A DNA stretch of 62,189 bases from Octopus sinensis. Its lineage: Eukaryota. The notes under the pieces were generated by a model, which was not told where the DNA came from, did no database searches, and saw only the letters and a list, made by a program, of their open reading frames with translations. Position 1 is the stretch's first letter; the number at the start of each line of letters is the position of its first letter. This document shows positions 4,240 through 55,720 of this stretch, one piece after another. The stretch spans positions 1-62,189 of the forward strand of contig NW_021832429.1 of NCBI RefSeq assembly GCF_006345805.1, given 5' to 3'. The translations under genes and the position numbers were made by a program.

Positions 4240-4488
4240 CTTCTTTGTGAAGTATATATATATATTATATATATAGGTACATATGTACATATTATATATA
4301 TATATATATATATATAGGTACATATGTACACATATTATATATATATATATAATATATATAATATATATATATATATAACATATATATATAATACATAATA
4401 TACATACATATATATATATACTATATACAGACATATATATATATATATATTATATACATATAATATATATATATTACATTATATATAT

Positions 4489-4521
<33 letters not shown>

Positions 4522-4802
4522 TACATATATATATATTATATATATACATATATATATATATATACATACATCACATATATATATAATATATATACATATA
4601 TACATACATACATACACATATATATATTATATATATATACATATATATATAATATATATATACATACATACATACATTATATATATAATAGACATAATAC
4701 ATACATACATACATATATATATACATATATACATCATAATACATATATTATATATAATATATAATATTATATACATACATACATACATATAATATACATA
4801 TA

Positions 4803-4838
<36 letters not shown>

Positions 4839-4887
4839 TATATACATACATACATATATATTATACATACATATATATATACATACA

Positions 4888-4918
<31 letters not shown>

Positions 4919-4926
4919 CATAATAT

Positions 4927-4957
<31 letters not shown>

Positions 4958-5094
4958 CATATATACATACATATATATATATATATATACATATATACAT
5001 ACATATATACATACATATATATATATATATATACATATATACATACATATATACATACATATATATATATATATATACATATATACATACATAT

Positions 5095-5134
<40 letters not shown>

Positions 5135-5139
5135 TATAT

Positions 5140-5170
<31 letters not shown>

Positions 5171-5270
5171 ATATATACATATATACATACATATATATAT
5201 ATATATATACATATATACATACATATATATATATTATATATATATATATATATATAATATATATATATAC
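4240..5270. repeat. (TA)n/(CATA)n compound microsatellite
   Basis: Direct inspection; source of the IYIY ORFs. Confidence 0.95.
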
Positions 5271-8344: not shown

Positions 8345-8588
8345 TTTATATATATATATACATATACATATATATATACATATATATATACATATACATT
8401 GTATATTAATATATTAACATACATATAGATACAATATATATACATATACATCTATATATATATATACATATATATATATATAAATATATAATATTATATA
8501 TATATATACATATACATATGTATATATATATATATACATATATATATATGTATATATATATATATACATATATATATACATATACATA

Positions 8589-8620
<32 letters not shown>

Positions 8621-8699
8621 ATACATTATATATCTATATAACATTAATATGTATAATCTATATATATACATATATATATATGTATATATATATATATAC

Positions 8700-8730
<31 letters not shown>

Positions 8731-9248
8731 CATATAATATATACATATATATATATAATACATATATATATACATATAGATATATATATATACATATACA
8801 TATATATATATATATATAACATATATATATATATTATATATACATATATATATTATATATATACATATACATATGTATATTATATATATAACATATAGAA
8901 TATATACATATATATATATATATATTAACATATATATATATACATATATATCTTATATATATATACATATATATATATACATATATATATATACATAACT
9001 TATATATATATACACATATATATATATACATATATATATATACCTATATACATAGTATATATATACATATACATATATACATATAAATATACATATATAT
9101 ATATACATATATATATATACATATTATATACATATACATATACATACATATATATATATACAATAATATATATATACATATATATATATACATATATATA
9201 CATATATATATACATATATATACACATATATATACATATGTATACACC

Positions 9249-9285
<37 letters not shown>

Positions 9286-9378
9286 CACATATATATATAT
9301 ACATATATATACATATATATACATACATATATATACATATATATACATATATACATTTATATACATATATATATATAA
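8345..9378. repeat. (TA)n/(CATA)n compound microsatellite
   Basis: Direct inspection. Confidence 0.95.
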
Positions 9379-11662: not shown

Positions 11663-11993
11663 ACAAAAAACAAAAAAAAAAAAAAGTGAGTACAAGAATG
11701 CATGACCAAAGGTAGGCGGGAAATAAAGCACGGGTGCATTGCAGCGTTTGCAGAGTTCAAAAGATAGGTCGGGTAGAATTTGTTCGCACAGATGCCGCAG
11801 ACAGAAGCTAGAGGAGAAGCTTTCTCAAGAATAGAACATTCTTCGGGATTGCCTCCACTACCGACGTCAGAGGGGCACGAATGCGTGCAATGGTAACGTA
11901 GGAGTGTTTTACAAGAGGTTTTTACTTCCTCCATTTTTAGAAGACGATAGGAAAGTACTCCGATTCCCATGATAATAGATACAGTCACTCGTG

Positions 11994-12027
<34 letters not shown>

Positions 12028-12028
<1 letters not shown>

Positions 12029-12428
12029 TCTTTACTCTTTACTCTTTACTGTTGTTTCAGTCATTTGACTGCGGCCATGCTGGAGCCACCGCCTTTAGTC
12101 GAGCAAATCGACCCCGGGACTTATTCTTTGTAAGCCCAGTACTTATTCTATCGGTCTCTTTTGCCGAACCGCTAAGTGACGGGGACGTAAACACACCAGC
12201 ATCGGTTGTCAAGCGATTTGGGGGGACAACACACAGACACAAAACACACATATACATATATACGACGGGCTTCTTTCAGTTTTCCGTCTACCAAATCCAC
12301 TCACAAGATCTGGTCGGCCCGGGGCTGTAGCAGAAGACACTTGCCCAAGATGCCACGCAGTGAGACTGAACCCAGAACCATGTGGTTGGTTAGCAGCTAC
12401 TTACCACACAGCCACTCCTGCGCCTATA
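12028..12428 (-). mobile_element. SINE family C (tRNA head, ttgggcaagtgtcttc core, internal (TA/CA)n, tail ggcggtgctccagcatggccgcagtcaaatgactgaaac + (GAGTAAA)n)
   Basis: Near-identical to copies at 42575-42968(-), 43146-43535(+), 48695-49088(-), split copy 56030-56225/56859-57025(-) and partial copy 32995-33205(+). Confidence 0.85.
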
Positions 12429-21589: not shown

Positions 21590-22320
21590 TGGAAGCACTC
21601 CGTCGGTTACGACGACGAGGGTTCCGGTTGATCCGATCAACGGAACAGCCTGCTCGTGAAATTAACGTGTAAGTGGCTGAGCACTCCACAGACACGTGTA
21701 CCCTTAACGTAGTTCTCGGGGATATTCAGCGTGACACAGAGAGTGACAAGGCCGGCCCTTTGAAATACAGGTACAACAGAAACAGGAAGTAAGAGTGAGA
21801 GAAAGTTGTGGTGAAAGAGTACAGCAGTGATCACCACCATGGTGATCTCATTCTCGCCCACATCATAAGCGGGAAGTGTAACCTCTCGAAAGAGCTGTTC
21901 TTCACTCCTGCTCCGGAGCGTCGGCTGCGGGGTCATTCCGAAAAGCTCTACCTGCGACGATTTCATCTCAATCGAAGGAGAGGAGCTTTCTCCGTCCGGG
22001 TTGCGGATCCGTGGAACAAGCTGCCAGACGAGATGGTGAAGATGCCGACGACCGCTTTGTTCAAAGCCTCCCTGGACCTCAAGTGGCCAGAACTCTTTAC
22101 ATGAACACCACCCTGTACTTAACTCCATGTCCCCCTACATGGCCTTGCTATTTGCTTTTGAGCCAAATTAACTAACTAACTAACTAATCCCTGCCGGAAC
22201 CTCGTGGAGCTTTTAGGTGTTTTCGCTCAATAAACACTCACAACGCCCGGTTTGGGAATCGAAACCACGATCCTACGACCGCGAGTCCGCTGCCCTAACC
22301 ACTGGGCCATTGCGCCTCCA
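21590..22320 (-). mobile_element. SINE family B copy interrupted by CR1-like fragment
   Basis: Colinear with the intact copy 34250-34644 apart from the insertion at 21841-22186. Confidence 0.85.
21841..22186 (+). mobile_element. 5'-truncated CR1/L2-like LINE 3' fragment nested inside a SINE
   Basis: GDLILAHIISGKCNLSKELFF...LRGHSEKLY...RRGAFSVRVADPWNKLPDEMV..F KASLD pattern ending at a stop, then a (TAAC)n tail. The SINE sequence resumes on both sides. Confidence 0.85.
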
Positions 22321-22398
22321 CAAGACAAGAAAATAAGGTAATATATAATGAAGATGAACGGAGGAAATTTCTTAGTAATTAATATTAAAGGAACTTAC

Positions 22399-23166
22399 CT
22401 TGACCAAATGCAATATGTATATCGACATCCTTCACGTGACTGGTAATATCCTCCACAAAGTTTAAGGGAATCACTTCGTTCCACATCCGGAAGGCGAGTG
22501 TAAGAGTAGCTCTCTGCTCTTCCACGGGGATGCGGTTGCTGTATCCCGAATCTAACAAACGCCAGCGTATCAATTTCTTTTTAAACATTTGTCCCCAGCC
22601 GTTCGCCTTGTTCACTACGGGCGAGCGGCGTTTGCGTTGATGCACCGGCGGCGAGTCGTTGTACGTAAGAGGATCTGTCTCTTTCAAACGGCGCGCCGTC
22701 TCCCGCAGATAATTTTGCCGCGTACGATGCTGCAGCTCTTTCGGGCGAAGTCCGAATCTGATGACCGACAGCAGATAGGAAATCGTATGCGGTTGGTTCC
22801 ACCACCTGGAATGAGGCGCCGACGTTTGCGGGGGTTGCGGACGCTCTGTCCACTGGATGATATTTGGTTTTATCGTGAAAGAGAACGGTGAATAAGTCAC
22901 TGTTGGCAACTTCGGCGACGAGTGTGTCGCCGTTTCTGATTGACTGAGCAATTTGATAAAGAGTTTCTTTAGGTGAATTACATTATATTCGCCATCTTTT
23001 AAATAGTTGATGTCATTTTGGTTAGTATAATATGAGGTTAATTCTTCAAGTTTTGAAATGGCTCCCAACTTTATTATCCCAGCTGGAACGGTTTCGGTGT
23101 AACGTAAAGGTACAGAAGACCTTAAGTTTCGGTTATTATTATTATTATTATCATTATTATTATTAT

Positions 23167-23197
<31 letters not shown>

Positions 23198-23756
23198 ATA
23201 ATTATAATTATTATTGTTAATGTCACTGTCTGAGTGTATGACGTCATTTACGTCTTGGTCGTTTGTACCCAAAACTGGTGTCGCTAATGTAGCGATTGCG
23301 GGTCTTCTGTCTTCGTCGTCTGTCGTTATGGTTGTTGCCGTCGTTGTCTTCGTCGTCGTCGTCGTCGTCGCCGATTCTGACTGAGTCGTTTCTTTACCTG
23401 TGGCCACAGTGGCCGTCGTCGAAAGAGCTGTGTCGGATGTGAGGTGAGGAGGCACCGATGTGAAAGCCAGTTTTTCACGTGTTGAAGATGAATGTGGCGG
23501 TGTGATTGGTGACGATGACGATGATGATGATGACGTATCAATTGATGATGATGATGATGATGATGGAGCAAAAGTTCTTATATATGACGATGATGATTCT
23601 GAGGATGAAGATGATGATGATGATGATGATGATGTCGATGATGATGAATGCAATGGCGGCAAGGAAGAGCCTAATCTCGACCCTACGGGTTCTTGTTCAG
23701 GGTTCGATGTCAGCTCTGTCTCGCCCTTGACATGATCTTTCTCGTTATAATTACCA

Positions 23757-23787
<31 letters not shown>

Positions 23788-24095
23788 TATTATTATTATT
23801 ATTATTGGTTATTGACTTATCAGAGTAATTGCTATTGCTATCCCTACTGTTCCTCTTACTACCACCACCACTACCACCACCACTACTAACACCACCACCA
23901 CTACCACTACTACTACTACCACCTACAACAATCGGGCTGGTACTTTCCTTCTGTCTTTGACTGTAGCTTCTAGTCAGCGTACCTCTTCGCAACGGTCTCG
24001 TTCGAACCGTTTTTGTCGTATAAACACCTGTTTCGAAGTCCAGCCCGTTTGCAACATCTCTATTACCCTTAATACTGCTGCTGCTACTGCTACTG

Positions 24096-24131
<36 letters not shown>

Positions 24132-26195
24132 ACAGTGTTGCTGTTGTTTACTTTGGCGTCGTTAATAGCGGTGCACTTACATAAGTTACTGCTATTACTT
24201 GCTCTAACTCTCTCGCTACTACTACTACTACTACTACTACTACTTACTACTGCTGCTGCTGCTGCTAAGGTTACAGTTACAATTGTTGTTGCTAGTGCTT
24301 GGGTTACTATTACATCTCTCCTTACCATTACAAACGTGTTCGAAAATCTCATCTGTATTAGACTTACTACTACTACTACTACTATTATTACTACTGCTGC
24401 TCCTACTATCCAACTGAAATTCTTCTTTAAAAGTAGTAGCATTAGTAGCGGCTGTAGTAAGAATTGTAGCAATGGTGGCTGTATCGTTGTTGTAGTTATT
24501 ACTGGTATTGCTATGGTTTATATTTTTGTTTTGTTGGTGGTTGGTGTGTGTGTTGTTGCTGTTGTTGTTATTGTTATTATTATTATTATTGTTATTTACA
24601 ATGTGTGTGGCACTATTGAAGTTGATCACACTACGCTTGCTAATTTGGTCACCATCGGTTGAACCGTGGACAGCAGGACCACTGCTGTCGTCCGGGTTCG
24701 TCCGAAATTCAGATGACGATGGAGAAGAAGAAGAAGAAGAAGAAGAAGAAGAAGAAGAAGAAGAAGAAGAAGAAGAAGAAGACACTGCCGTAAAAGTTGG
24801 TGAAAGGGATGACCACGACGACGAAGACACATACGCTGTAGACGACGATGATGATGGTGATGGTGATGAAGATGACAATGATGATGATGATGATGACGAT
24901 GACGACGACGACGACGACAATGTTTGAGAAGCGAACGAGTGAAAATATGGCCGCTGCTCTTGTCTACCTTCACTGCCTTTGCGTTCAACTTCACCATTCG
25001 AAACCGCTTCCTCCAGCCAAGACTCGTTCCATGGCTGCTCGTCACTCAACGTCCGTACATGGTCATCAGAATATTCCAGCCATGTATTGCTACTTGTTGA
25101 TATTGATTTTGTTGTTGTTGTTGGTGGTGGTGTTGGTGTTGCTGTTGTTTTTAATTTCTGTTTTGTTTGTGAGTTTTGAAACTGTACAAATTTACGTGCA
25201 TTATTATTATTATTATTATTATTTATAGTTGTTGTGGTTGTTACATTAGAAGTATGAGTAGATGTGTTAGAAATTGGTTTGGGTGTTTGTGATGACTGCG
25301 ATGATGTTGATGTTGTGTTTTCTGAGCTAATTGTGTTTAACCTTGACGGCGCTAAGACTTTTGCCGTGTGGTGTCCTGCAGTTTTACTAGTCCGTACTCC
25401 ACCTTCTGATACTGTTTCTTTCGCCGCTGTGGTTTTAGACGATGGTGTATCTGATTCAGCAATAACATCATTTAATAATATCTCACGGGCTAATAACGTG
25501 TCATTAGCGATCGCTTTGGTATTATTTGATACCGTACTGTTACTGTGTTCAGTCAGGGATACGATCGAATAACCATTTGCCGTATTCCGTTTCCAGCGAC
25601 CTCTAGTGGCTCGAAATTTAGAGAAAGTCGCCACCAAGAGAGAAGCCAGCTTGGAAGTCAAAGGTAAATTAGAAGAAAGCAATGGGGATAAATTTGACGA
25701 GACAGATCGTTTGTCTCTCGCTAAAAACTTCTCCCCCTTGGTGGTGGTCGTTTTGATTTTTGAACGGGGTCTGTGAAATGCTTCCCGCTTCGAGCGTTTT
25801 CTTAGCGAGTTCATATTTTTTTTACTGTGTCGTTTGTTATCTAGTCGTCGATTGACCCTGTTTCCTCGGCCATGTCTCGGCTCCGGACGACGAATGTGCT
25901 TCCTTTTTGAATTTATGTGTTCATCCCTATACACGCCATCATCTTTGTCTTTATTACCACAACGAGAAGCAGACATCAGTTCCTTGGTCTCCTGGTTCAA
26001 CTTACCTGTCACGGACAAGTGATAACTTTTCTGGTACTGGGTGATTGCCCACATAACCTTGGTTTTATCACAATTATATAATATCTGTTGATGCTGTACA
26101 CTGCCTGGCCGACCATGCTGTCTGTTTGAGCGTGAACGGTACGGAGAATGTTTATGTTGCTTGCATTTTAGATATCCGTACCGCATCATATATGC
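22399..26195 (-). CDS. MMP21: Giant internal exon of an MMP21-like matrix metalloproteinase (pro-domain + ~1,100-aa low-complexity insert + N-terminal part of catalytic domain); one 1-bp frameshift at ~24244
   Basis: Acceptor ttttatttgcAG|GCATAT at 26196/26195 (phase 0) and donor CAAG|GTAAGT at 22399/22398 (phase 1). N-part AYMMRYGY...AITQYQKSYHLSVTGKLNQETKELMSASRCGNKD is an MMP pro-domain with cysteine switch. C-part RKRRS...FKKKLIRWRLLDSGYSNRIPVEEQRATLTLAFRMWNEVIPLNFVEDITSHVKDVDIHIAFGQG closely matches the MMP21 catalytic N-terminus as recalled (FSKRTLSWRLL..LAFRMWSEVTPLDF.E...VDIKLGFG.G). Removing one T from the (TAC)n tract gives 3796 nt = 1265 codons + 1, matching both splice phases. Confidence 0.85.
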
Positions 26196-26337
26196 CTGCA
26201 AATAAAACAAATGCTATTTAAATAACGACGAAGGAAATGTACATTATTGCGACGAAAATAGATAAATATCACAGATTAAATAAATAATGTTTCTCAACAT
26301 GATACAAAGAACTCGTAATATAATATGTGTGTGTGTA

Positions 26338-28225
26338 AAGGCGGCGAGCTGGCAGGATCGTCAGCACGCCGGGCAAAATGCTTAGCGGTATTTCGTCTGC
26401 CGCTACGTTCCGAGTTCAAATTCCGCTGATGTCGACTTTGCCTTTCATCCTTCCGGGGTCGATTAAATAAGTACCAGTTACGCACTGGGGTCGATATAAT
26501 CTGTCCTTGTTTGTCTCCTCTGTGTTTAGCCCCTTGTGGGTATTAAAGAAATAGGCATTTCGTCTGTCTTTACGTTCTGAGTTCGAATTCCGCCGAGGTC
26601 CACTTTGCGTTTTATCCTTTCAGGGTCGATAAATAAAGTACCAGTTGCATACTGGGGTCGTTCTAATCGACTGGCCACCCTCCCCCTCAAAAAAAAATTC
26701 GGGCCTTGTGCCAAGAGTGGAAAAGAATGTGTGTAGGCACGCACACACACGCACGTATATATATATATATATATAATATATATATATATATATAATATAT
26801 ATATATATACTTACATAGGCGCAGGCACGCCTGTGTTGTTTCAGAAATTTACTTACACACACACATATATTGTGAGCACAGCAGGAATCAGAAGGACTCA
26901 AATAAATTTAAATATAAGAAACCGAGATTCTTTATATGAATGCAAACATCCATTCTATACTTTCGATGTACTGAAAACGATGTGGTGAGTCTCCTGACTG
27001 ACCGTTTCGCAGTTTGTTGATCGCTCCACAGAGATGTATCAGATTTTCTTCCCCAGTCGATATAGTAATAATCCTTTGTTATAGGGACAAGGCCTGAAAG
27101 TTGGGAGGAGGGGACTAGTCGATTACATTTAACCCCCTCCCCCTGTGTACCACTGGTACTTAATTTATCGGCCCTGAAAGTATGTAAGGCAAGGTCGACC
27201 TCGGCGGAATTTGAACTTAAAACGTTTCGCCCGGTGTGCTAACGCATCATTTTTACTCTAGGCTCAAGGCCCGAAATTTTGGGGGTGGGGAGCCAGTCGA
27301 TTAGATAGACATCACTATGCAACTGGTACTTAATTTATTGATCACGAAAAGATGAAAGGCAAAGTCGACCACGCCGGAATTTGAACTCAAAACATAAAGA
27401 CGGAGGAAATACCTGTTTCTTTACTACCCACAAGGGGCTAAACACAGAGAGGACAGACAAGGACAGACAAACGGATTAAGTCGATTGCATCGACCCCAGT
27501 GCGTACCTGGTACTTAAGGATGAAAGCAAAGTCGTCCTCGGTGGAATTTGAACTATAAACGTAACCGCAGACGAAATACCGCTAAGCATTTCGCCCGGCG
27601 TGCTAACGTTTCTGCCAGCTCGCTGCCTTTCTTTCAGTGGTAGTACTAGTAACATTATTACTACAAAACCACGACCACCAGTAGTAGTAGTAGTAGTGAC
27701 GGTAGTGGTGGTGGTGGTGGTGGTGGCGATGGTAAACGATGGCTTCAACTATGTTATCACTAATAATCACCATTACAGTGATTTCTTTTATCAGCACAGT
27801 CTCGAGAAAGTAAACTAGGGAAGTCCCAGTTTCCAAATAAACATTTCTCACAAACATCTCATGTGCCTGTGTGTGTTCGACTTTACAGTGAGTGTATACG
27901 CGCGTACACACACTCACATTTATGCATACATTTATTTACCCACACACATACACACACAGATATATGTATATATATTTATATGTGTGTGTGTGTGTGTGTA
28001 TCTGTGTGTAGATACACACACGTATGCACATGTATATAAATAATACATATATATAAACACACACACGGACACACACATACATATATATATATATGTATAC
28101 ATACATACATACATGTATATATACTCATATATGTTTTTATATACATATGGGTATATATGTATATACAAGCATATATACAAATAACAAGATAACGTATATA
28201 TACAAACATATATACACGTTATATA

Positions 28226-28262
<37 letters not shown>

Positions 28263-29665
28263 GAAGAAGGAGAGAAAGAAAACGTGTGTCTTTGACAAGT
28301 GAATAACGCGTGATTGCACACACACACAAACACACAACAACAACAACAACAACAACGACGACGACAACGTACAGATATAGTTAAAGGTGAAGTGAAATAT
28401 CTCGCTCGTCGCTGACTGTAATTTGATCTAAAGAAAACTTGCTGCCTTGAGCCAGTCACTACTGATCTGTCTCCTATCGCTGAAGCAAATATTGCCCTGA
28501 CAAGACCTCCTGACCTGTCCTTACACTAAAAGGTAACAACAACAAAAAGCAGATTGCAATAATTGATACAAGGTAGCAGCAGCTATCCAGTAGCTTGCTA
28601 GCTACTACCAACCTACCTACCTACCTACCTACCAACATGCCTATCTGCTTTCCTATCTAGTTACCCATTCATCGGCCACCATGTAGACAAAATTCCTTTG
28701 AGCATTTCCGTTTCTCCTGCAGAATCGTAAGCGCATCAGTCAAACTGCTAGGCAGCATATATTCCCGCCCTTGAACTTTTTCTTATTTCTTTACTACCCA
28801 CAAGGAGCTACACACAGAGGGGACAAACAAGGACAGACAAATGGATTAAGTCGATTATATCGACCTCAGTGCGTAACTGGTACTAATTTAATCGACCCCG
28901 AAAGGATGAAAGGCAAAGTCGACCTCGGCGGAATTTGAACTCAGAACGTAGCGGCAGATGAAATACCTATTTCTTTACTACCCACAAGGGGCTAAACACA
29001 GAGAACAAACAAACAAAGACAGACAAACGGATTAAGTCGATTATATCGACCCCAGTGCGTAACTGGTACTTAATTTATCGACCCCGAAAGGATGAAAGGC
29101 AAAGTCGACCTCGGCGGAGTTTGAACTCAGAACGTAACGGCAGACGAAAAACGGCTACGCATTTCGCACGGCGTGCTAACGATTCTGCCAGCTCGCCGCC
29201 CTAAAGTTTTTCTCGCCTTAAAGTTTTTCTACTAGGTCTGAAATTTTAAGTGGGAAGGGGATACATCGACCACCACTGCTCAACTGATACTAATTTAATC
29301 GATTCCGAAAGGATAAAAGCAAGGTCGGTCTCAGCGGATTTTGAACTCAGAACGTAAAGACGGACAAAATGCTGTTAAGCATATCTTCCTGTGCGCTAAC
29401 TATTCCGCCAGCTCGCTGCCTTAGTACCTCAAATAACAATCCTTTGTACTATAGGCACAATATCTGAAATTTAGGTGAAGGCGGCTTGTCGATTACATCA
29501 ACCCAAATACTCAACTGGTATTTATTTCACTGACACCCGAAAGGATGAAAAACAAAGTCGGTCCTCAGCAGAATTTGAACTCAGAACGTAAAGCCGGAAG
29601 AAATTTTGACCGTAAAGCCGCTAAGCATTTTGACCGGTGCGCTAACGCTTCTGCCAGCTCGCCTG
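26338..29665. mobile_element. Cluster of family A SINEs (head ggcggcgagctggcagaa..., B-box gagttcaaattcc): 26338-26720(+), 27068-27630(-), 28784-29202(-, tandem), 29225-29665(-)
   Basis: Repeated core gagttcaaattccgccgaggtcgactttgcctttcatcctttcggggtcgataaa..taagtaccag..actggggtcgat. Confidence 0.85.
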
Positions 29666-39649: not shown

Positions 39650-39707
39650 GTGTGTATATATATTATATATATATATGTATATTATGTGTATAATATATAT
39701 ATATATT

Positions 39708-39748
<41 letters not shown>

Positions 39749-39749
39749 T

Positions 39750-39783
<34 letters not shown>

Positions 39784-40014
39784 GTTATATAGTATATATA
39801 TATATATGTATATATATATGTATATATATATGTGGATATATTGTATATATATGTATATATATATGTGTGTGTATATAATATATATTATGTATATATATAT
39901 GTGTGGTGTATATATATATATATATATGTATATATAATGTGTGTGTGTGGAATATATTATTATATATATATATATATGTATTATAATGTGTATATATATA
40001 TATATGTATATATA

Positions 40015-40049
<35 letters not shown>

Positions 40050-40068
40050 TATGTATATATATGTGTAA

Positions 40069-40108
<40 letters not shown>

Positions 40109-40450
40109 GTATATATATATGGTATATATATATATTATATATGTATATTTATTGTTATATACATATATATATAATATGTTATATATCATATATATATATA
40201 TATGTATATATATACTATATATATGTATATATATATATGTATAATATATATATATATATAATGTATGTATATTAGTGTATATATATATATATATATTTAT
40301 GGATATATATTATATATATTATATATATATATGTATATATATATATATTATATTTATGTGTATATATATAGATATATATATATATATATATAGTATTATA
40401 TATATATAATATATATGTTATATATATATATATATGTGTATATATATATG
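39650..40450. repeat. (TA)n/(TATG)n compound microsatellite
   Basis: Direct inspection. Confidence 0.95.
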
Positions 40451-41883: not shown

Positions 41884-42451
41884 TCTTATGAGAGCTCAAA
41901 ACCTCTCGTGGAAGCGCCATCCAACAAAAATGCAAATATATGGGGAACTACCACCTGTGTCATCTCTTGTGAAAGGTAGGAGAGTCCAGTTTGCTGGACA
42001 TTGTTGTAGAGCTGAAAAAGAAGTAATTTCTACTCTTCTCCCCTGGAAGCCATCTGCTCGCGATACCAGAGGGCGCACACTCTTCGAGAGGCGGTTGGAT
42101 GGAACCTATACTAGCCTCCTTATGAGAGCTCAAAACCTCTCGTGGAAGCGCCATCCAACAAAAATGCAAATATATGGGGAACTACCACCTGTATCATCTC
42201 TTGTGAAAGGTAGGAGAGTCCAGTTTGCTGGACATTGTTGTAGAGCTGAAAAAGAAGTAATTTCTACTCTTCTCCTCTGGAAGCTATCTACTCGCAATAC
42301 CAGAGGGCGCACACTCTCCTACCCTGATGTAATCTCCAGGGATACAGGCATCCAGCAACAGGACCTCCGTAATGCTATGATGGACCGTGAAGTCTGGCGA
42401 AACATAGTAAATTCCATTGTCTCGACCACGGTCGAACAATGATGATGATGA
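41884..42451 (+). mobile_element. 5'-truncated RTE-like LINE 3' end with in-frame 5' duplication; 11-bp TSD
   Basis: ORF ...RRVQFAGHCCRAEKEVIS.LL.W...RGRTLSYPDVISRDTG...LRNAMMDREVWR, (TGA)n tail, TSD taggtcagttc at 41873-41883 and 42452-42462; a ~200-bp segment recurs at 234-bp period. Confidence 0.85.
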
Positions 42452-47504: not shown

Positions 47505-47514
<10 letters not shown>

Positions 47515-47535
<21 letters not shown>

Positions 47536-47759
47536 CATCAAAGGGAGCGAGCTGGCAGAATCGTTATCACTGTAGGCGAAATGCTTGGCGGTATTTCTTC
47601 TGTCGTTACGTTCTGAGTTCAAATTATGCCGAGGTCGACTTTGTCTTTCATCCTTTCGGGGTCGATAAAATAAGTACCAGTGGAGCATTGGAGTCGATGT
47701 AATCGACTTGTCCCCCTCCCCAAAAATTTCCGGCCTTGTGCCTATAGTAGAAAGGATAA

Positions 47760-47792
<33 letters not shown>

Positions 47793-48255
47793 GGCGGCGA
47801 GATGGCAGAATCGTTAGCATGCCGGGCAAAAATGCTTAGCGGCATTTCGTCTATCTGCACTTTCTGGGTTCAAATACCACCGAGATCGACTTTGCTCTTC
47901 ATCCTTTTGGGGGTCGATTAAACAAGTACCAGCTGAACTCTGGGGTCGATGTAATTGATTCATCACCTCCCCGCCAAAAATGCCGCCCTTGTGGAAAAAT
48001 TTGAAACCATTATTATTATTATTATTATTATCATCAAAGGGAGCGAGCTGGCAGAATCGTTATCACTGTAGGCGAAATGCTTGGCGGTATTTCTTCTGTC
48101 GTTACGTTCTGAGTTCAAATTATGCCGAGGTCGACTTTGTCTTTCATCCTTTCGGGGTCGATAAAATAAGTACCAGTGGAGCATTGGAGTCGATGTAATC
48201 GACTTGTCCCCCTCCCCAAAAATTTCCGGCCTTGTGCCTATAGTAGAAAGGATAA

Positions 48256-48288
<33 letters not shown>

Positions 48289-48510
48289 GGCGGCGAGATG
48301 GCAGAATCGTTAGCATGCCGGGCAAAAATGCTTAGCGGCATTTCGTCTATCTGCACTTTCTGGGTTCAAATACCACCGAGATCGACTTTGCTCTTCATCC
48401 TTTTGGGGGTCGATTAAACAAGTACCAGCTGAACTCTGGGGTCGATGTAATTGATTCATCACCTCCCCGCCAAAAATGCCGCCCTTGTGGAAAAATTTGA
48501 AACCATTATT
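47515..48510. repeat. Tandem duplication, 496-bp unit x2 (two SINEs per unit)
   Basis: Matching ORF ends at 47688/48184 and 47860/48356; boundaries in (ATT)n. Confidence 0.9.
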
Positions 48511-48694
48511 ATTATTATTATTATTATTTTATTTATTTTTTTTTTTTCTATGTTTGACTTTTGCTTTACATTTGTACAAGCTGGCTCTAAGTCTCACCCA
48601 GAGACCTCAAGAGACGACATGCTGGAAGTTCATGTTGGTGTTATGCCTAGGGTGCCATATATTTGGTTTTGTACTTAGCGTTGTTCTAGAGAAT

Positions 48695-51144: not shown

Positions 51145-51833
51145 CTAATGGCTAATAAACTTCTGCATTCCTAATCCATTAAATCCAGTAGTCTTCTTGA
51201 TCATCGCCCAGCACAGCGGGATTGGTAGACACATCGAGCGAAAGAGCCGGCTTTTATCATATTGATGAAGAAAGACAATGACAAACCCATCACCGACGGA
51301 CAACGACGATGTTGGTGATGATGGTAAAAGTGGTGGTGGTGATGATGATGATGATGACGCCATGGCAATGATGGTGACGAAGAGAAAGAGAGATAGAGAA
51401 GAGAAGAGAGAGATTATGTGAGTGTTTGTGTAGTAATGGGGGTAGTTGGTGTTTAACGCTATTATCAAATTAATGATGATGGGTGGTAAAGTTGGATGAA
51501 GCCAGTTGTGTGAGTAATGAACACGACGGCCATGTGGCGAAGGAGAAACAGTGGACAACACGACAGCAGTGGTGAGGATAAATGATAGTAGTAGTAGTAG
51601 TAGTAGTAGTAGTAGCAGTAGTAGTAGTAATAGTAGCAGCAGCAGTAGTAGTAGTAATGGTAGTAGTATTAGTAGTGGTGGTGGTGGTGGTGGTGCAGCA
51701 GCAGTAGTAGTAGTAGTAGTAGTAGAGTAGTAGTAGCAGTAGTACTAGTAGCAGTAATAGTTGTAGTAGTAGTAGTAGCAGTAGTAGTAGCAGCAGTAGT
51801 ATCAGTAGTAGTCGCAGTAGCAGCAGTAGTATC

Positions 51834-51883
<50 letters not shown>

Positions 51884-52019
51884 CAGTAGTAGTAGTAGTA
51901 GTAGTAGCAGTAGCAGCAGCAGTAGTAGTAGTAGTTGTTGTTGTAGTGAAGGTTGGTGTTTGGTGGTAAATTGGTCGATGGTAAGGTCCTGGTAGAAGTG
52001 ACGGTGATGGTGATAGCAT
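51145..52019 (-). CDS. Candidate upstream coding exon/ORF (Thr-rich, then poly-Leu signal-peptide-like segment), broken by a 1-bp deletion at ~51725; possibly first exon of the MMP21-like gene
   Basis: ATG at 52019 (MLSPSPSLLPGPYHRPIYHQTPTF-T-run). Restoring one T in agtag^agtag joins it without stops to ORF 51145..51561 through AAAPPPPPPLLILLPL(n)SFILTTAVVLSTVSPSPHGRR. No homology recognised and no convincing donor found. Confidence 0.3.
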
Positions 52020-52196
52020 ACTGGCAAATAAAGGCAACTGTGGTGGTATTGGTGTGTTAGCATAAATTGTAGTAGTATCGGTGGTAGCTGCAGTGACTGC
52101 TGCTGCTGCTGCTGCAGTTGTGGCTCTAGTATTAATAGTAAATGGTGTAGCACCAGAATACGCGGCGGCGGCGGTGGAGGTGGTGGAAGATGATGA

Positions 52197-52228
<32 letters not shown>

Positions 52229-52399
52229 ATGATGATTACAGTGATAATTAAAAGGAGCAGAAGGAAAAGGGAACCCCGATTCTAATGAAGTAATGAAGAC
52301 GATGATGATAACGAAAGAGAAAAAAAATGAAAAGAATGAAGCGGAAGTGGGGGCGGGAGGGGTGTTGGTAATGAAACAATATAAATCAAGAAATGATGA

Positions 52400-52744
52400 G
52401 AATGATGATGATAATAATAATAATGATAGTAGTAGTAGTAGTAATAATAATAATAATAGTAATAATAATAATAAGAATAATAATAATAAATAATAATAAT
52501 AATTATAATAATAATAGTAATAAATAATAATAATAATAATAATAGTAGTAGTAGTAATAATAATAATAATAGTAGTAATAATAATAATAGAATAATAATA
52601 ATAAATAATAATAATAATTATAATAATAATAGAATAATAATAATAAATAATAATAATAATTATAATAATAATAGTAATAAATAATAATAGTAATAAAGAA
52701 TAATAATAATAATAGTAGTAGTAGTAGTAGTAATAATAATAATA

Positions 52745-52775
<31 letters not shown>

Positions 52776-52970
52776 TAGTAATAATAATAATAATAATAGA
52801 ATAATAATAATAGAATAATAATAATAGAATAATAATAATAGTAATAATAATAATGATAATAGAATAAAAATAATAAATAATAATAATAATAGAATAATAA
52901 TAATGATAATAATAATAATGACGATGATGATGATGATGATGATGATGATGACGATGATGATGACGATGAT
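52400..52970. repeat. (AAT)n/(AGT)n/(GAT)n trinucleotide tract
   Basis: Direct inspection. Confidence 0.95.
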
Positions 52971-53307
52971 CTGGAGGGAGGAAGAAAAGCGTAAACAGAA
53001 GAGGATATTCGTGACGACACAGTTTTAAGACATGCATCAATCAAAAGTACGGCCATCTTGATTATTAACTATGACAACACTTAATGTAAACATGAATATT
53101 GGACGTTAAGCTATAAAACAGTGATTTCTTACATCGACAGACGTCACAAATTTATTGGAGAAACACATCGCTGCTTCAAACGGCTCCAAATATATTACGA
53201 TGGCATTTTTATATTATTTTATTTTATTTTTTATTGACCTCCATTTCCGCATTCGATATGACGACGTGTCAACAAAAGTTTATATATATTTATTATAAGA
53301 CGCAAGC

Positions 53308-55092: not shown

Positions 55093-55720
55093 CGGCAAGC
55101 TGGCAGAAACGTAAGCACGCCGGGCGAAATGCATAGCGGTATTTCGTCTGCCGCTACGTTCTGAGTTCAAATTCCGCTGAGGTCGACTTTGCCTTTCATC
55201 CTTTCGGGGTCGATAAATTAAGTACCAGTTACGCACTGGAGTCGATGTAATCGACTTAATCCGTTTGTCTGTCCTTGTTTGTCCCCTCTGTGTCTAGCCC
55301 CTTGTGGGCAGTAAAGATATAGGTATTTCGTCTGCCGTTACGTTCTGAGTTCAAATTCCGCCGAGGTCGACTTTGCCTTTCATCCTTTCGGGGTCGATTA
55401 AATAAGTACCAGTTACGCACTGGGGTCGATTAAATAAGTACCAGTTACGCACTGGGTCGATTAAATAAGTACCAGTTACGCACTGGGGTCGATGTAATCG
55501 ACTTAATACCTATGTCTGTCCTTGTTTGTCCCCTCTGTGTTTAGCCCCTTGTGGGTAATAAAGAAATAGGTATTTCGTCTGCCGTTACGTTCTGAGTTCA
55601 AATTCCACCGAGGTCGAGTTTGCCCTTTCATTCTTTCGGGGTCGATAAATAATTTAAATATCAGTTGCGTACTGGGGGTCGATCTAAAATGTCGGGCTTT
55701 GTGCCTAGAGTAGAAAAGTG
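55093..55720 (+). mobile_element. Family A SINE tandem multimer with internal 32-bp triplication
   Basis: One headed unit followed by headless ~180-bp units joined at aaagaaatag|gtatttcg. Confidence 0.85.

What the first reader, a model, noticed from the sequence alone, without database searches (positions are those of the whole stretch)
22636..25950. MMP21-like protease with a ~1,100-aa microsatellite-built insertion in its pro-domain
Seen: about 3.3 kb of open frame (after one 1-bp fix) lies between the cysteine switch (Cys codon 25961-25959) and the RKRR activation site (22636-22625). It mixes poly-Ser, poly-Asn and poly-Thr tracts with unique linkers, all in one 3.8-kb exon. Established: vertebrate MMP21 has only tens of residues here, and MMP21 acts in left-right patterning. 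Inference: the frame has been kept open across many triplet repeats, giving a very large, probably disordered and O-glycosylated (mucin-like) pro-region. It could alter latency, diffusion or tethering, and offers many length-polymorphic tuning sites.
Basis: partly seen in the sequence, partly recalled or inferred. Interest (0 to 1): 0.8.

Follow-up and report, generated by a model that had tools for sequence, protein, structure and literature searches.

The report
MMP21 protease with giant pro-peptide linker
One 3.8-kb exon of an invertebrate (apparently cephalopod) MMP21 protease gene carries about 1,100 extra, mostly disordered, Ser/Asn/Thr-rich residues between the latency cysteine and the furin activation site. 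This is the most extreme case found here of a linker that varies in length in MMP21 across animals, and this copy also has an unexplained 1-bp frameshift.

Summary
On the minus strand, a single exon (26195..22399) has a consensus acceptor and a consensus donor. It encodes an MMP pro-domain with the cysteine switch (Cys 25961-25959), then 1,107 residues, then RKRR (22636-22625) and the start of a matrixin catalytic domain.

The frame is open only if one A (24244/24245) inside an (AGT)n poly-Ser run is removed. The open frame is not chance. The insert has 745 non-repeat codons with no stop, against 25-68 stops in each of the other five frames (P about 4e-19). All 13 tandem arrays in the exon have periods that are multiples of 3, against 66 of 208 outside.

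All named relatives are MMP21 or MMP21-like. A second, unnamed relative (ENA contig, locus L001) has the same splice sites and an intact 936-residue insert. The two inserts cannot be aligned.

The site is a general length hotspot. Cys-to-furin spacing ranges from 16 to 1,111 residues (median about 113), with hagfish at 532 and coho salmon at 538.

Best reading: a translated, unconstrained, rapidly evolving disordered linker, kept open because the catalytic domain lies downstream, and removed on furin activation. "Microsatellite-built" overstates it (21% of bases). Any function of the insert is untested.

The parts
22399..26195 (-). Single 3,797-nt coding exon of an MMP21 orthologue, running from the pro-domain to the start of the catalytic domain
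   Evidence: Acceptor ttgttttatttgcag|GCA at 26196/26195 and donor CAAG|GTAAGT at 22399/22398. The same junctions occur in the relative L001. The frame is 1,265 codons open after a 1-bp fix.
25944..26195 (-). Canonical MMP pro-domain part: AYMMRYGYLKCK ... ITQYQKSYHLSVTGKLNQETKELMSASRCGNKD, with the cysteine-switch Cys at 25959-25961
   Evidence: Pfam PG_binding_1 C-terminal half, E 2.6e-4. Aligns to pro-stromelysin-1 and pro-MMP2 across the RCG motif. 49% identity to P0001. Coordinates checked.
25701..25928 (-). Strongly basic stretch just after the cysteine switch, with furin-type sites RSKR (25785-25796) and RDKR (25707-25718). A further RWKR lies at 25587-25598.
   Evidence: There are 3 R-x-[KR]-R motifs in the insert against 0.27 expected from composition.
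22829..25946 (-). Hypervariable insert of about 1,040 residues, with no counterpart in short-linker relatives and not alignable to the other long-insert relative. Composition is Ser 22%, Asn 12%, Thr 11%. It contains 13 triplet-period tandem arrays.
   Evidence: MAFFT places it wholly between RCGNKD and the conserved R-W-W/K block. No significant local similarity to the P0001 insert: score 40 against a shuffle mean of 40. Composition and runs, TRF, and AF2 pLDDT mostly below 50.
24244..24245 (-). Frameshift site: one extra A inside (AGC)n(AGT)2-A-(AGT)9 coding for poly-Ser. As assembled, the upstream frame stops at TAG 24240-24242.
   Evidence: The downstream 615 codons are still fully open, so the change is either an error or very recent.
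24173..24332 (-). Cluster of six Cys (exon residues 622-674) in an otherwise Cys-free insert. It may be the only island shared with the relative.
   Evidence: P0001 has its only insert cysteines at the equivalent distance from the Cys switch. The local alignment is reached by 3.9% of shuffles. Weak.
22637..22828 (-). Conserved pre-furin block of the pro-peptide: HSRWWNQ..LLSVIRFG..RQNYLRETARRLKETDPL
   Evidence: 62% identity to P0001 across this block and the catalytic start. Aligns to the R.WKRS..LL..L / R..YL..YI..LK.EDP block of gastropod and other MMP21-like proteins. AF2 predicts a helix here.
22625..22636 (-). RKRR, the proprotein-convertase (furin) activation site
   Evidence: Aligned with ER.KRS in relatives.
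22399..22624 (-). Start of the matrixin catalytic domain (MFKKKLIRWRLLDSGYSNRIPVEEQRATLTLAFRMWNEVIPLNFVEDI..DIHIAFGQ-G), ending at the phase-1 donor
   Evidence: Pfam Peptidase_M10, 26.1 bits (cut-off 24), profile positions 3-60 of 159. tblastn with MMP21 proteins gives E of 2e-24 or weaker.

Best explanation
This is exon 2 of an MMP21 orthologue. Its relationships suggest a cephalopod, though the species was not identified.

In all MMP21 proteins, the pro-peptide segment between the cysteine switch and a conserved pre-furin helix is a low-complexity linker of variable length. In this lineage the linker has grown to about 1,040 residues, giving 1,107 between the Cys and RKRR. It grew by accumulating unique hydrophilic sequence and by recent in-frame triplet-repeat expansions coding for poly-Ser, poly-Asn and poly-Thr.

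The insert is translated as part of the zymogen. It is probably intrinsically disordered and possibly glycosylated. The frame is kept open mainly because the catalytic and hemopexin domains lie downstream in the same reading frame. Selection therefore removes stops, frameshifts and non-triplet repeats but hardly constrains the sequence. That explains why two related genes both keep inserts of about 1,000 residues that cannot be aligned.

On activation, a furin-type convertase cuts after RKRR. The whole pro-peptide, insert included, is then separated from the mature enzyme. Any role of the insert is therefore limited to the zymogen stage (folding, trafficking, latency) or to the released pro-peptide.

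The single-base frameshift in the poly-Ser run is most likely an assembly or sequencing error or a very recent allele.

Shown: exon boundaries, domain identities, MMP21 affiliation, non-random openness, presence in a second genome, and a variable linker across animals. Inferred: translation, disorder, removal by furin, and near-neutrality.
For: - Splice sites and exon limits, with identical junctions in L001.
- Pro-domain and matrixin matches.
- Of 140 relatives, every named one is MMP21 or MMP21-like, from molluscs, annelid, brachiopod, nemertean, arthropods, hemichordate, tunicates and vertebrates.
- No stops in 745 non-repeat codons against 25-68 in the other frames. The same holds in L001: 830 codons with no stop against 27-61.
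- Only triplet-period repeats occur inside the exon.
- The insert sits exactly in the variable stretch of the family alignment.
- Cys-to-furin spacing is 16-1,111 across 95 sequences (the window, the search hits and a few close cluster members), with long repeat-built inserts in hagfish, salmon, skate and lamprey MMP21.
- The two long inserts share no significant similarity.
- AF2 gives no confident structure in the insert.
- MMP21 architecture (pro-peptide with cysteine switch and furin site, encoded in exon 2 in Xenopus) is described in bioRxiv 10.1101/2024.10.13.618030 and PMC9484203.
Against: - No transcript or protein evidence was available, so translation of the whole insert is inferred from the open frame only.
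- The assembled sequence carries a frameshift that would truncate the protein before the catalytic domain.
- No other exons of the gene (signal peptide, zinc site, hemopexin) lie in the window, so intactness of the gene cannot be judged.
- Similar lengths (1,107 and 936), a similarly placed Cys cluster and an excess of furin-type motifs in both inserts hint at more constraint than pure neutrality.
- Single-sequence AF2 gives low pLDDT even for the genuine pro-domain, so it is weak evidence for disorder.
Confidence: 0.7

Rival explanations
1. The copy in this window is a recently inactivated allele or a young pseudogene. On this reading the extra A at 24244/24245 is real, and translation ends at TAG 24240-24242 after the pro-domain and half of the insert, with no catalytic domain.
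For: The frameshift is present in the sequence as given. No annotated protein containing this exon was found in either protein collection, although many other invertebrate MMP21 proteins were.
Against: The 615 codons downstream of the shift remain completely open and the splice donor is intact, so decay has not begun. The shift is a 1-bp change inside a trinucleotide array, where replication slippage would add or remove 3 bp but consensus errors typically add 1 bp. The relative L001 has no shift.
Confidence: 0.2
2. Most of the insert is an intron or 'exitron' that is spliced out. On this reading the mature zymogen has an ordinary short linker.
For: Donor-like GTAAGT strings occur inside the exon. 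A few frame-restoring donor/acceptor pairs can be drawn, for example 24325 to 23598 (727 nt), or 26005 to 23598 (2,407 nt).
Against: An intron has no reason to stay open, yet two species keep 745 and 830 non-repeat codons free of stops and tolerate only triplet repeats. The one consensus donor (26005) lies inside conserved pro-domain codons upstream of the Cys switch and is absent at the same place in L001. Only one acceptor-like site (23598) reaches even a loose score, and the sense strand is purine-rich. In relatives the Cys switch and the catalytic start share one uninterrupted ORF.
Confidence: 0.08
3. The insert is a functional product in its own right. Convertases would cut at the furin-type sites near its N-terminal end (RSKR, RDKR, RWKR) and at RKRR, releasing a secreted Ser/Thr/Asn-rich glycoprotein of about 1,000 residues. 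The gene would then work as a two-product precursor.
For: R-x-[KR]-R motifs are over-represented in both inserts: 3 against 0.27 expected, and 6 against 1.0. The two inserts have similar lengths and a similarly placed Cys cluster.
Against: There is no sequence conservation between the two inserts. Basic residues are clustered, which inflates motif counts. No domain was detected. The linker varies from 16 to over 1,000 residues across the family, which fits drift.
Confidence: 0.1
4. The long open frame is a chance by-product of triplet microsatellites in a repeat-rich genome.
For: Elsewhere in the window a 528-codon ORF (51470-53056, minus strand) is produced by homopolymer-coding repeats alone.
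Against: After masking repeats, the exon still has 745 insert codons without a stop (P about 4e-19). It is flanked in frame by recognisable MMP domains and consensus splice sites, and a second genome shows the same arrangement.
Confidence: 0.01

Closest known systems
Vertebrate MMP21 (human MMP21, Xenopus XMMP/Mmp21)
   Same: Pro-peptide with a cysteine switch, an extra segment before an R-x-K/R-R furin site, and the catalytic start motif WRL..G.S..L....R....AFRMWSEV. The pro-peptide and the catalytic start share exon 2 (PMC9484203).
   Different: From my own recollection, not tested here, the human and frog linker is a few tens of residues. Here it is 1,107. The invertebrate conserved block R.WKRS..LL / YL..YI..LK.EDP before the furin site is not obvious in the vertebrate sequences read. 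The role in left-right patterning is known only for vertebrates.
Annotated MMP21 of hagfish (Myxine glutinosa, 1,093 aa) and coho salmon (XP_031671681.1, 1,117 aa); also skate, sawfish and lamprey models
   Same: Several hundred residues of low-complexity or tandem-repeat sequence inserted at the same place, between PRCGVPD and the furin site. The salmon and lamprey inserts are P/T-rich and mucin-like.
   Different: Those inserts are 212-538 residues long. The hagfish, salmon and skate inserts are built from long peptide repeats of roughly 10-16 residues, while the lamprey insert is irregular Thr-rich low complexity. The window insert is twice as long, mostly unique sequence, and punctuated by single-amino-acid runs. 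The expansions are clearly independent.
P0001 / locus L001 (ENA ERZ21867824 contig ctg113335l), an unnamed relative and probably another cephalopod
   Same: Same exon with the same splice junctions. Identity is about 87% by eye in the catalytic start and 62% over the last 144 residues. The insert is 936 residues, open, and Ser/Arg/Thr/Pro-rich, with a Cys cluster about 540 residues after the Cys switch.
   Different: The insert sequence cannot be aligned. It has far fewer homopolymer runs (107 masked residues against 355) and no frameshift.
Gastropod MMP21-like proteins (Biomphalaria glabrata XP_055878666.1, Nucella lapillus KAL8587048.1)
   Same: Same conserved blocks on both sides of the linker. 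The linker is already Ser-rich and low-complexity in Nucella.
   Different: The Cys-to-furin distance is only 115-120 residues.

Membership tests
Matrixins (MMPs; MEROPS M10A, Pfam PF00413) | Pro-peptide cysteine switch (PRCG[VN]PD-type) preceded by the helical pro-domain | tested here: met
   SASRCGNKD, with Cys at 25959-25961, aligns to PRCGVPD/PRCGNPD of pro-MMP3 and pro-MMP2. The PG_binding_1 C-terminal half scores 21.6 bits, just under the cut-off of 23, because only part of the domain lies in this exon. The motif has Ser for Pro and Lys for Pro, as in the other MMP21-like mollusc sequences.
Matrixins (MMPs; MEROPS M10A, Pfam PF00413) | Matrixin catalytic domain | tested here: met
   Peptidase_M10 scores 26.1 bits against a cut-off of 24, covering profile positions 3-60 of 159. 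Only the first ~60 of the domain's 159 profile positions are encoded in the window.
Matrixins (MMPs; MEROPS M10A, Pfam PF00413) | Zinc-binding HExxHxxGxxH motif and Met-turn | not testable with these tools
   No such motif occurs in any frame of the window, and tblastn with full-length MMP21 proteins finds no further exons. The downstream exons lie outside the 62-kb window.
MMP21 orthogroup | Closest relatives are MMP21 rather than other MMP subfamilies | tested here: met
   Of 140 hits at E<=1e-3, every one that carries an informative name is MMP21 or MMP21-like, from Biomphalaria, Lingula, Tubulanus, Limulus, Tachypleus, Palaemon, Hyalella, Ptychodera, Styela, Myxine, Oncorhynchus, Pristis, Erpetoichthys, Latimeria and Bombina. 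PDB chains of other MMPs reach only E of about 0.03-1. No formal phylogeny was built.
MMP21 orthogroup | Furin-type R-x-K/R-R site between pro-peptide and catalytic domain | tested here: met
   RKRR at 22625-22636, aligned with ER.KRS of relatives.
MMP21 orthogroup | Four-bladed hemopexin domain following the catalytic domain | not testable with these tools
   The relevant exons are outside the window.
MMP21 orthogroup | Role in left-right axis determination | not testable with these tools
   Known for vertebrates (PMC9484203; bioRxiv 10.1101/2024.10.13.618030). No data exist for molluscs.
Mucin-like (PTS) domains | Pro/Thr/Ser-dominated sequence, usually in tandem peptide repeats | tested here: inconclusive
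   S+T is 33%, but Pro is only 4.6% and Asn 12%. T/P-rich patches are short (TTATPTPPPTTTTK, ATTTTTTKTTTATTITT). Repeats are single-residue runs, not peptide repeats.
Mucin-like (PTS) domains | Dense O-glycosylation | not testable with these tools
   No predictor or experimental data were available. The insert has 22 N-x-S/T sequons.

The most novel reading that the evidence does not exclude
The insert of about 1,000 residues is not just tolerated filler. On this reading it is an ancient, length-conserved module of cephalopod MMP21 with a conserved central Cys cluster. Furin-type cleavage at both ends would excise it and release it as a separate secreted Ser/Thr/Asn-rich glycoprotein. One gene would then make both a protease and a mucin-like product.
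Probability: 0.1. Interest if true: 0.7.

Novelty: new variant of a known kind. Interest (0 to 1): 0.42.

Why it matters
In MMPs the cysteine switch normally sits a short distance from the catalytic domain. A linker of about 1,100 residues between the switch and the activation site raises two questions: how latency is maintained, and whether the pro-peptide does more than inhibit.

The wider result is that this linker is a recurrent expansion hotspot in MMP21 across animals (cephalopod-like relatives, hagfish, salmonids, skates, lamprey, tunicates). I found no literature describing this. It offers a natural series for testing how linker length affects the folding, secretion and activation of a developmentally important protease.

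It is also a clean example of an open frame maintained by position, upstream of essential domains, rather than by any function of its own sequence. Practically, it warns annotators not to treat such repeat-rich exon interiors as introns.

Tried and rejected
- **Word-indexed protein search.** Searching with the last 245 residues found nothing. The exhaustive representative search with the same query found 140 relatives. I therefore did not spend the two remaining indexed searches.
- **Metagenome scan.** A scan of JGI metagenome contigs with the conserved C-terminal block found no further relative.
- **Other exons of the gene.** Motif scans and tblastn with 12 full-length MMP21 proteins found none in the window. 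A weak hit at 26897-27034 (E 0.08) did not look like exon 1.
- **Conserved islands between the two long inserts.** The best local score equals the shuffle mean. Only a marginal Cys-cluster similarity remains.
- **A frame-restoring intron.** Only weak or Cys-switch-deleting candidates were found. The consensus donor at 26005 is not conserved in L001.
- **Pfam.** It finds no domain in the insert at E<=1.
- **AF2 without an alignment.** It gives low confidence everywhere, so it cannot separate disorder from lack of information.
- **Literature.** Searches for MMP21 with octopus, mollusc, or pro-domain insertion found nothing relevant to this feature.
- **Species identity.** I could not determine the species of either the window or L001.
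- **dN/dS.** It was impossible because no alignable close orthologue was available.
Full report
**Observation**

On the minus strand there are two long ORFs in different frames, 24243-26213 (657 codons stop-to-stop) and 22388-24517 (710 codons). They overlap by 275 nt.

- The upstream frame ends at TAG 24240-24242 inside a poly-Ser run that reads ...AGC AGC AGT AGT A AGT AGT....
- Removing one A (24244/24245) joins the two frames into a 1,265-codon frame without a stop.
- The exon starts at 26195, after the acceptor tttgttttatttgcag. It ends at 22399, in a consensus phase-1 donor CAAG|GTAAGT. Its length is 3,797 nt.
The Cys codon is 25961-25959 and RKRR is 22636-22625, with 1,107 residues between them.

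**Is the open frame more than chance?**

The genome around it is full of microsatellites. Repeats alone can produce a 528-codon ORF, as at 51470-53056. I therefore masked low-complexity runs before testing.

- 745 insert codons remain, and none is a stop. The same positions hold 33 and 68 stops in the other sense frames and 25-40 in the antisense frames. Composition predicts about 41, giving P(0) of about 4e-19.
- Ranked by non-repeat open codons, the two ORFs (498 and 481) stand far above everything else in the window; the next is 199.
- All 13 non-overlapping tandem arrays in the exon have a period of 3, 9 or 15. Outside the exon only 66 of 208 arrays have a period divisible by 3, and dinucleotide repeats dominate (Fisher 8e-7).

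The frame has therefore been under selection to stay open.

"Microsatellite-built" is an overstatement. Tandem arrays cover 785 of 3,797 nt. Homopolymer-like runs cover 355 residues of the exon product, nearly all of them in the insert. The rest is unique sequence. Several runs are pure single-codon arrays, such as (TCT)20 and (AAT)8-9, which points to recent expansion.

**What it is**

The exon's N-terminal 84 residues are an MMP pro-domain, with the PG_binding_1 C-terminal half and SASRCGNKD aligned to the PRCGVPD of pro-MMP3 and pro-MMP2. After RKRR comes the first part of a matrixin catalytic domain (Peptidase_M10 at 26.1 bits, above the cut-off).

An exhaustive search of 1.84 billion representative proteins with the last 245 residues gave 140 hits. 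Every one that carries an informative name is MMP21 or MMP21-like. They come from gastropods, a brachiopod, a nemertean, chelicerates, crustaceans, a hemichordate, a tunicate, a hagfish, elasmobranchs, teleosts, bichir, coelacanth and a frog. The annelid (Owenia), lamprey and Ciona hits carry only generic names. Other MMP subfamilies do not appear, and PDB chains of other MMPs reach only E of about 0.03-1. The MMP21 assignment is therefore supported.

The zinc site and the hemopexin exons lie outside the window, so I could not check whether the whole gene is intact.

**A second long-insert gene**

The best hit, P0001, is a 1,137-residue uninterrupted ORF on a 141.6-kb ENA contig (ERZ21867824, locus L001).

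- It has the same acceptor (TTTTTGCAG|GCCTACATGATG...) and the same donor (CGTG|GTAAGT).
- Its ends match the window exon: 49% identity over the pro-domain and 62% over the last 144 residues, and roughly 87% by eye in the catalytic start. Gastropods reach about 61-64% there.
- DNA similarity is confined to these exon ends, and both sequences have 36.6% GC.
- Between the Cys switch and its furin site (RTKR) lie 936 residues. That stretch has 830 non-repeat codons with no in-frame stop, against 27-61 in the other frames.
- It has no frameshift.
- The two inserts are not alignable: the best local score is 40 against a shuffle mean of 40.

This independent genome shows that a coding insert of about 1,000 residues in this exon is a lineage feature, not a quirk of one assembly. 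It also argues strongly against an intron.

**Where the insert sits, and how unusual it is**

Related mollusc-type sequences share this layout:

1. Pro-domain ending in RCGN.D.
2. About 35-60 variable, often acidic or Ser-rich residues.
3. A conserved block: R.WKRS..LL..L, then R..YL..YI..LK.EDP, then ER.KRS.
4. The catalytic start.

The window's extra sequence lies entirely in the variable stretch. The last 64 residues before RKRR (22637-22828) are the conserved block, not part of the expansion.

I measured the Cys-to-furin distance in 95 sequences that have both landmarks: the window itself plus search hits and a few of their close cluster members. It ranges from 16 to 1,111 residues, with a median of about 113.

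| Sequence | Cys-to-furin distance (residues) |
|---|---|
| This window | 1,111 (longest) |
| P0001 | 936 |
| Coho salmon | 538 (PPPTTATDRPHQS repeats) |
| Hagfish | 532 (GPLDGIGEVEATPSDD repeats) |
| Skate | 391 |
| Lamprey | 286 (Thr-rich) |
| Sawfish | 212 |
| Gastropods | 115-120 |

The statement that vertebrate MMP21 has only tens of residues here is therefore true of some species but not in general. The site is a recurrent, independent expansion hotspot. The window is its extreme.

**How it most likely works**

Established knowledge of MMPs (also summarised in PMC9484203 and bioRxiv 10.1101/2024.10.13.618030) is that the pro-peptide cysteine blocks the catalytic zinc, and that furin-type convertases activate MMP21-type enzymes by cutting after R-x-K/R-R.

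From this I infer that the insert is translated as part of the zymogen and leaves with the pro-peptide after cleavage at RKRR. It therefore cannot tether or slow the mature enzyme unless the pro-peptide stays bound.

Its composition is Ser 22%, Asn 12%, Thr 11%, with few hydrophobic residues and 22 N-glycosylation sequons. AF2 models show no confident structure: pLDDT is mostly below 50. The only helices are in the true pro-domain, in a segment at exon residues of about 1059-1084, in the conserved pre-furin block and in the catalytic start, plus one isolated low-confidence helix inside the insert at exon residues 572-586. This fits intrinsic disorder, but single-sequence AF2 is weak evidence.

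The key point for interpretation is that an open frame here does not demonstrate a function for the insert. The essential domains lie downstream in the same exon, so selection against stops and frameshifts is automatic. Complete loss of sequence similarity between the two long inserts fits near-neutral evolution of an unconstrained linker.

Three observations hint at more constraint:

- The two inserts have similar total lengths.
- Both have a small Cys cluster about 540 residues after the Cys switch, with a marginal similarity reached by 3.9% of shuffles.
- R-x-[KR]-R motifs are in excess in both inserts: 3 against 0.27 expected, and 6 against 1.0. In the window, three such sites lie near the N-terminal end of the insert.

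These keep alive a more interesting reading, in which the insert is excised at both ends as a separate secreted product. I rate that at about 10%.

**The frameshift**

If real, it would truncate the protein before the catalytic domain. Four points make an assembly error or a very recent allele the most likely explanation:

- The 615 downstream codons are still open.
- The donor site is intact.
- The change is a 1-bp gain inside a trinucleotide array, which is not a slippage product.
- The relative lacks it.

Only reads can decide. A frame-restoring intron is unlikely, because the candidates are weak or would delete the Cys switch, and the consensus donor-like site at 26005 is not conserved.

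**Comparison and novelty**

This is a member of the MMP21 orthogroup on every feature that could be tested in the window. What differs is the scale of the pro-peptide linker. I found no paper describing long pro-peptide inserts in MMP21 of any animal, although annotated hagfish and salmon proteins already display the phenomenon.

I class it as a new variant of a known kind and rate it moderately interesting. It is a real, well-supported and extreme feature, but it sits in a region that is removed on activation and seems largely unconstrained.

Noticed in passing
window 51470-53056 (-): A 528-codon ATG-to-stop ORF made almost entirely of poly-Tyr, Ile, Leu, Thr, His, Pro and Gln runs (ATA/TAG-type triplet arrays at 51586-51947 and 52411-52919). 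It is a spurious, repeat-generated ORF and served as a negative control for the finding.
   Followed up: partly
window 24173-24332 (-) and L001 about 11900-12035 (+): Both long inserts are almost free of cysteine, except for a small cluster at nearly the same distance (about 540 residues) from the cysteine switch, with a shared [FW]E[HR][VL]C ... CN(P)C pattern. The similarity is reached by 3.9% of composition-preserving shuffles.
   Followed up: partly
window 25587-25598 (-), compared with 22780-22810 (-): RGRWKRNTANGYSIVSL near the start of the insert resembles the conserved mollusc block RPWKRSA..LL..L. The family alignment instead matches that block to HSRWWNQ..LLSVI just before the furin site. 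This may be an old internal duplication or a displaced copy of the block.
   Followed up: no
window 26000-26008 (-): A perfect 9/9 donor consensus CAG|GTAAGT lies inside the conserved pro-domain codons for V-T-G-K-L, upstream of the cysteine switch. The orthologous codons in L001 (ACGGGCCAACTA) lack it, so it is probably a chance or cryptic site.
   Followed up: yes
window 4253-5269, 8347-9377, 39655-40449: Three (TA)n arrays of about 0.8-1 kb cause the 18-20% GC troughs in the composition profile. There are also 2-copy long-unit repeats at 47513-48527 (496 bp), 55207-55652 (247 bp), 41885-42317 (234 bp) and 28784-29149 (186 bp).
   Followed up: no
window 21808-22104 (+), in the intron just 3' of the exon: A 98-residue ORF ending ...GAFSVRVADPWNKLPDEMVKMPTTALFKASLDLKW looks, from memory, like the C-terminal tail of an RTE/CR1-type non-LTR retrotransposon ORF2. 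Pfam gave no match at E<=0.01.
   Followed up: partly
tools: The word-indexed protein search returned nothing for a query that the exhaustive representative search matched to 140 proteins. One of these (P0001) shares a 19-residue exact stretch with the query. Negative results from the indexed search should not be trusted for this kind of sequence.
   Followed up: no
relatives P0072, P0057, P0050, P0063, P0125: Annotated MMP21 proteins of coho salmon, hagfish, a skate, lamprey and the tunicate Styela carry independent repeat-rich inserts of 200-540 residues at the same pro-peptide site. I did not find this family-wide hotspot described in the searchable literature.
   Followed up: partly
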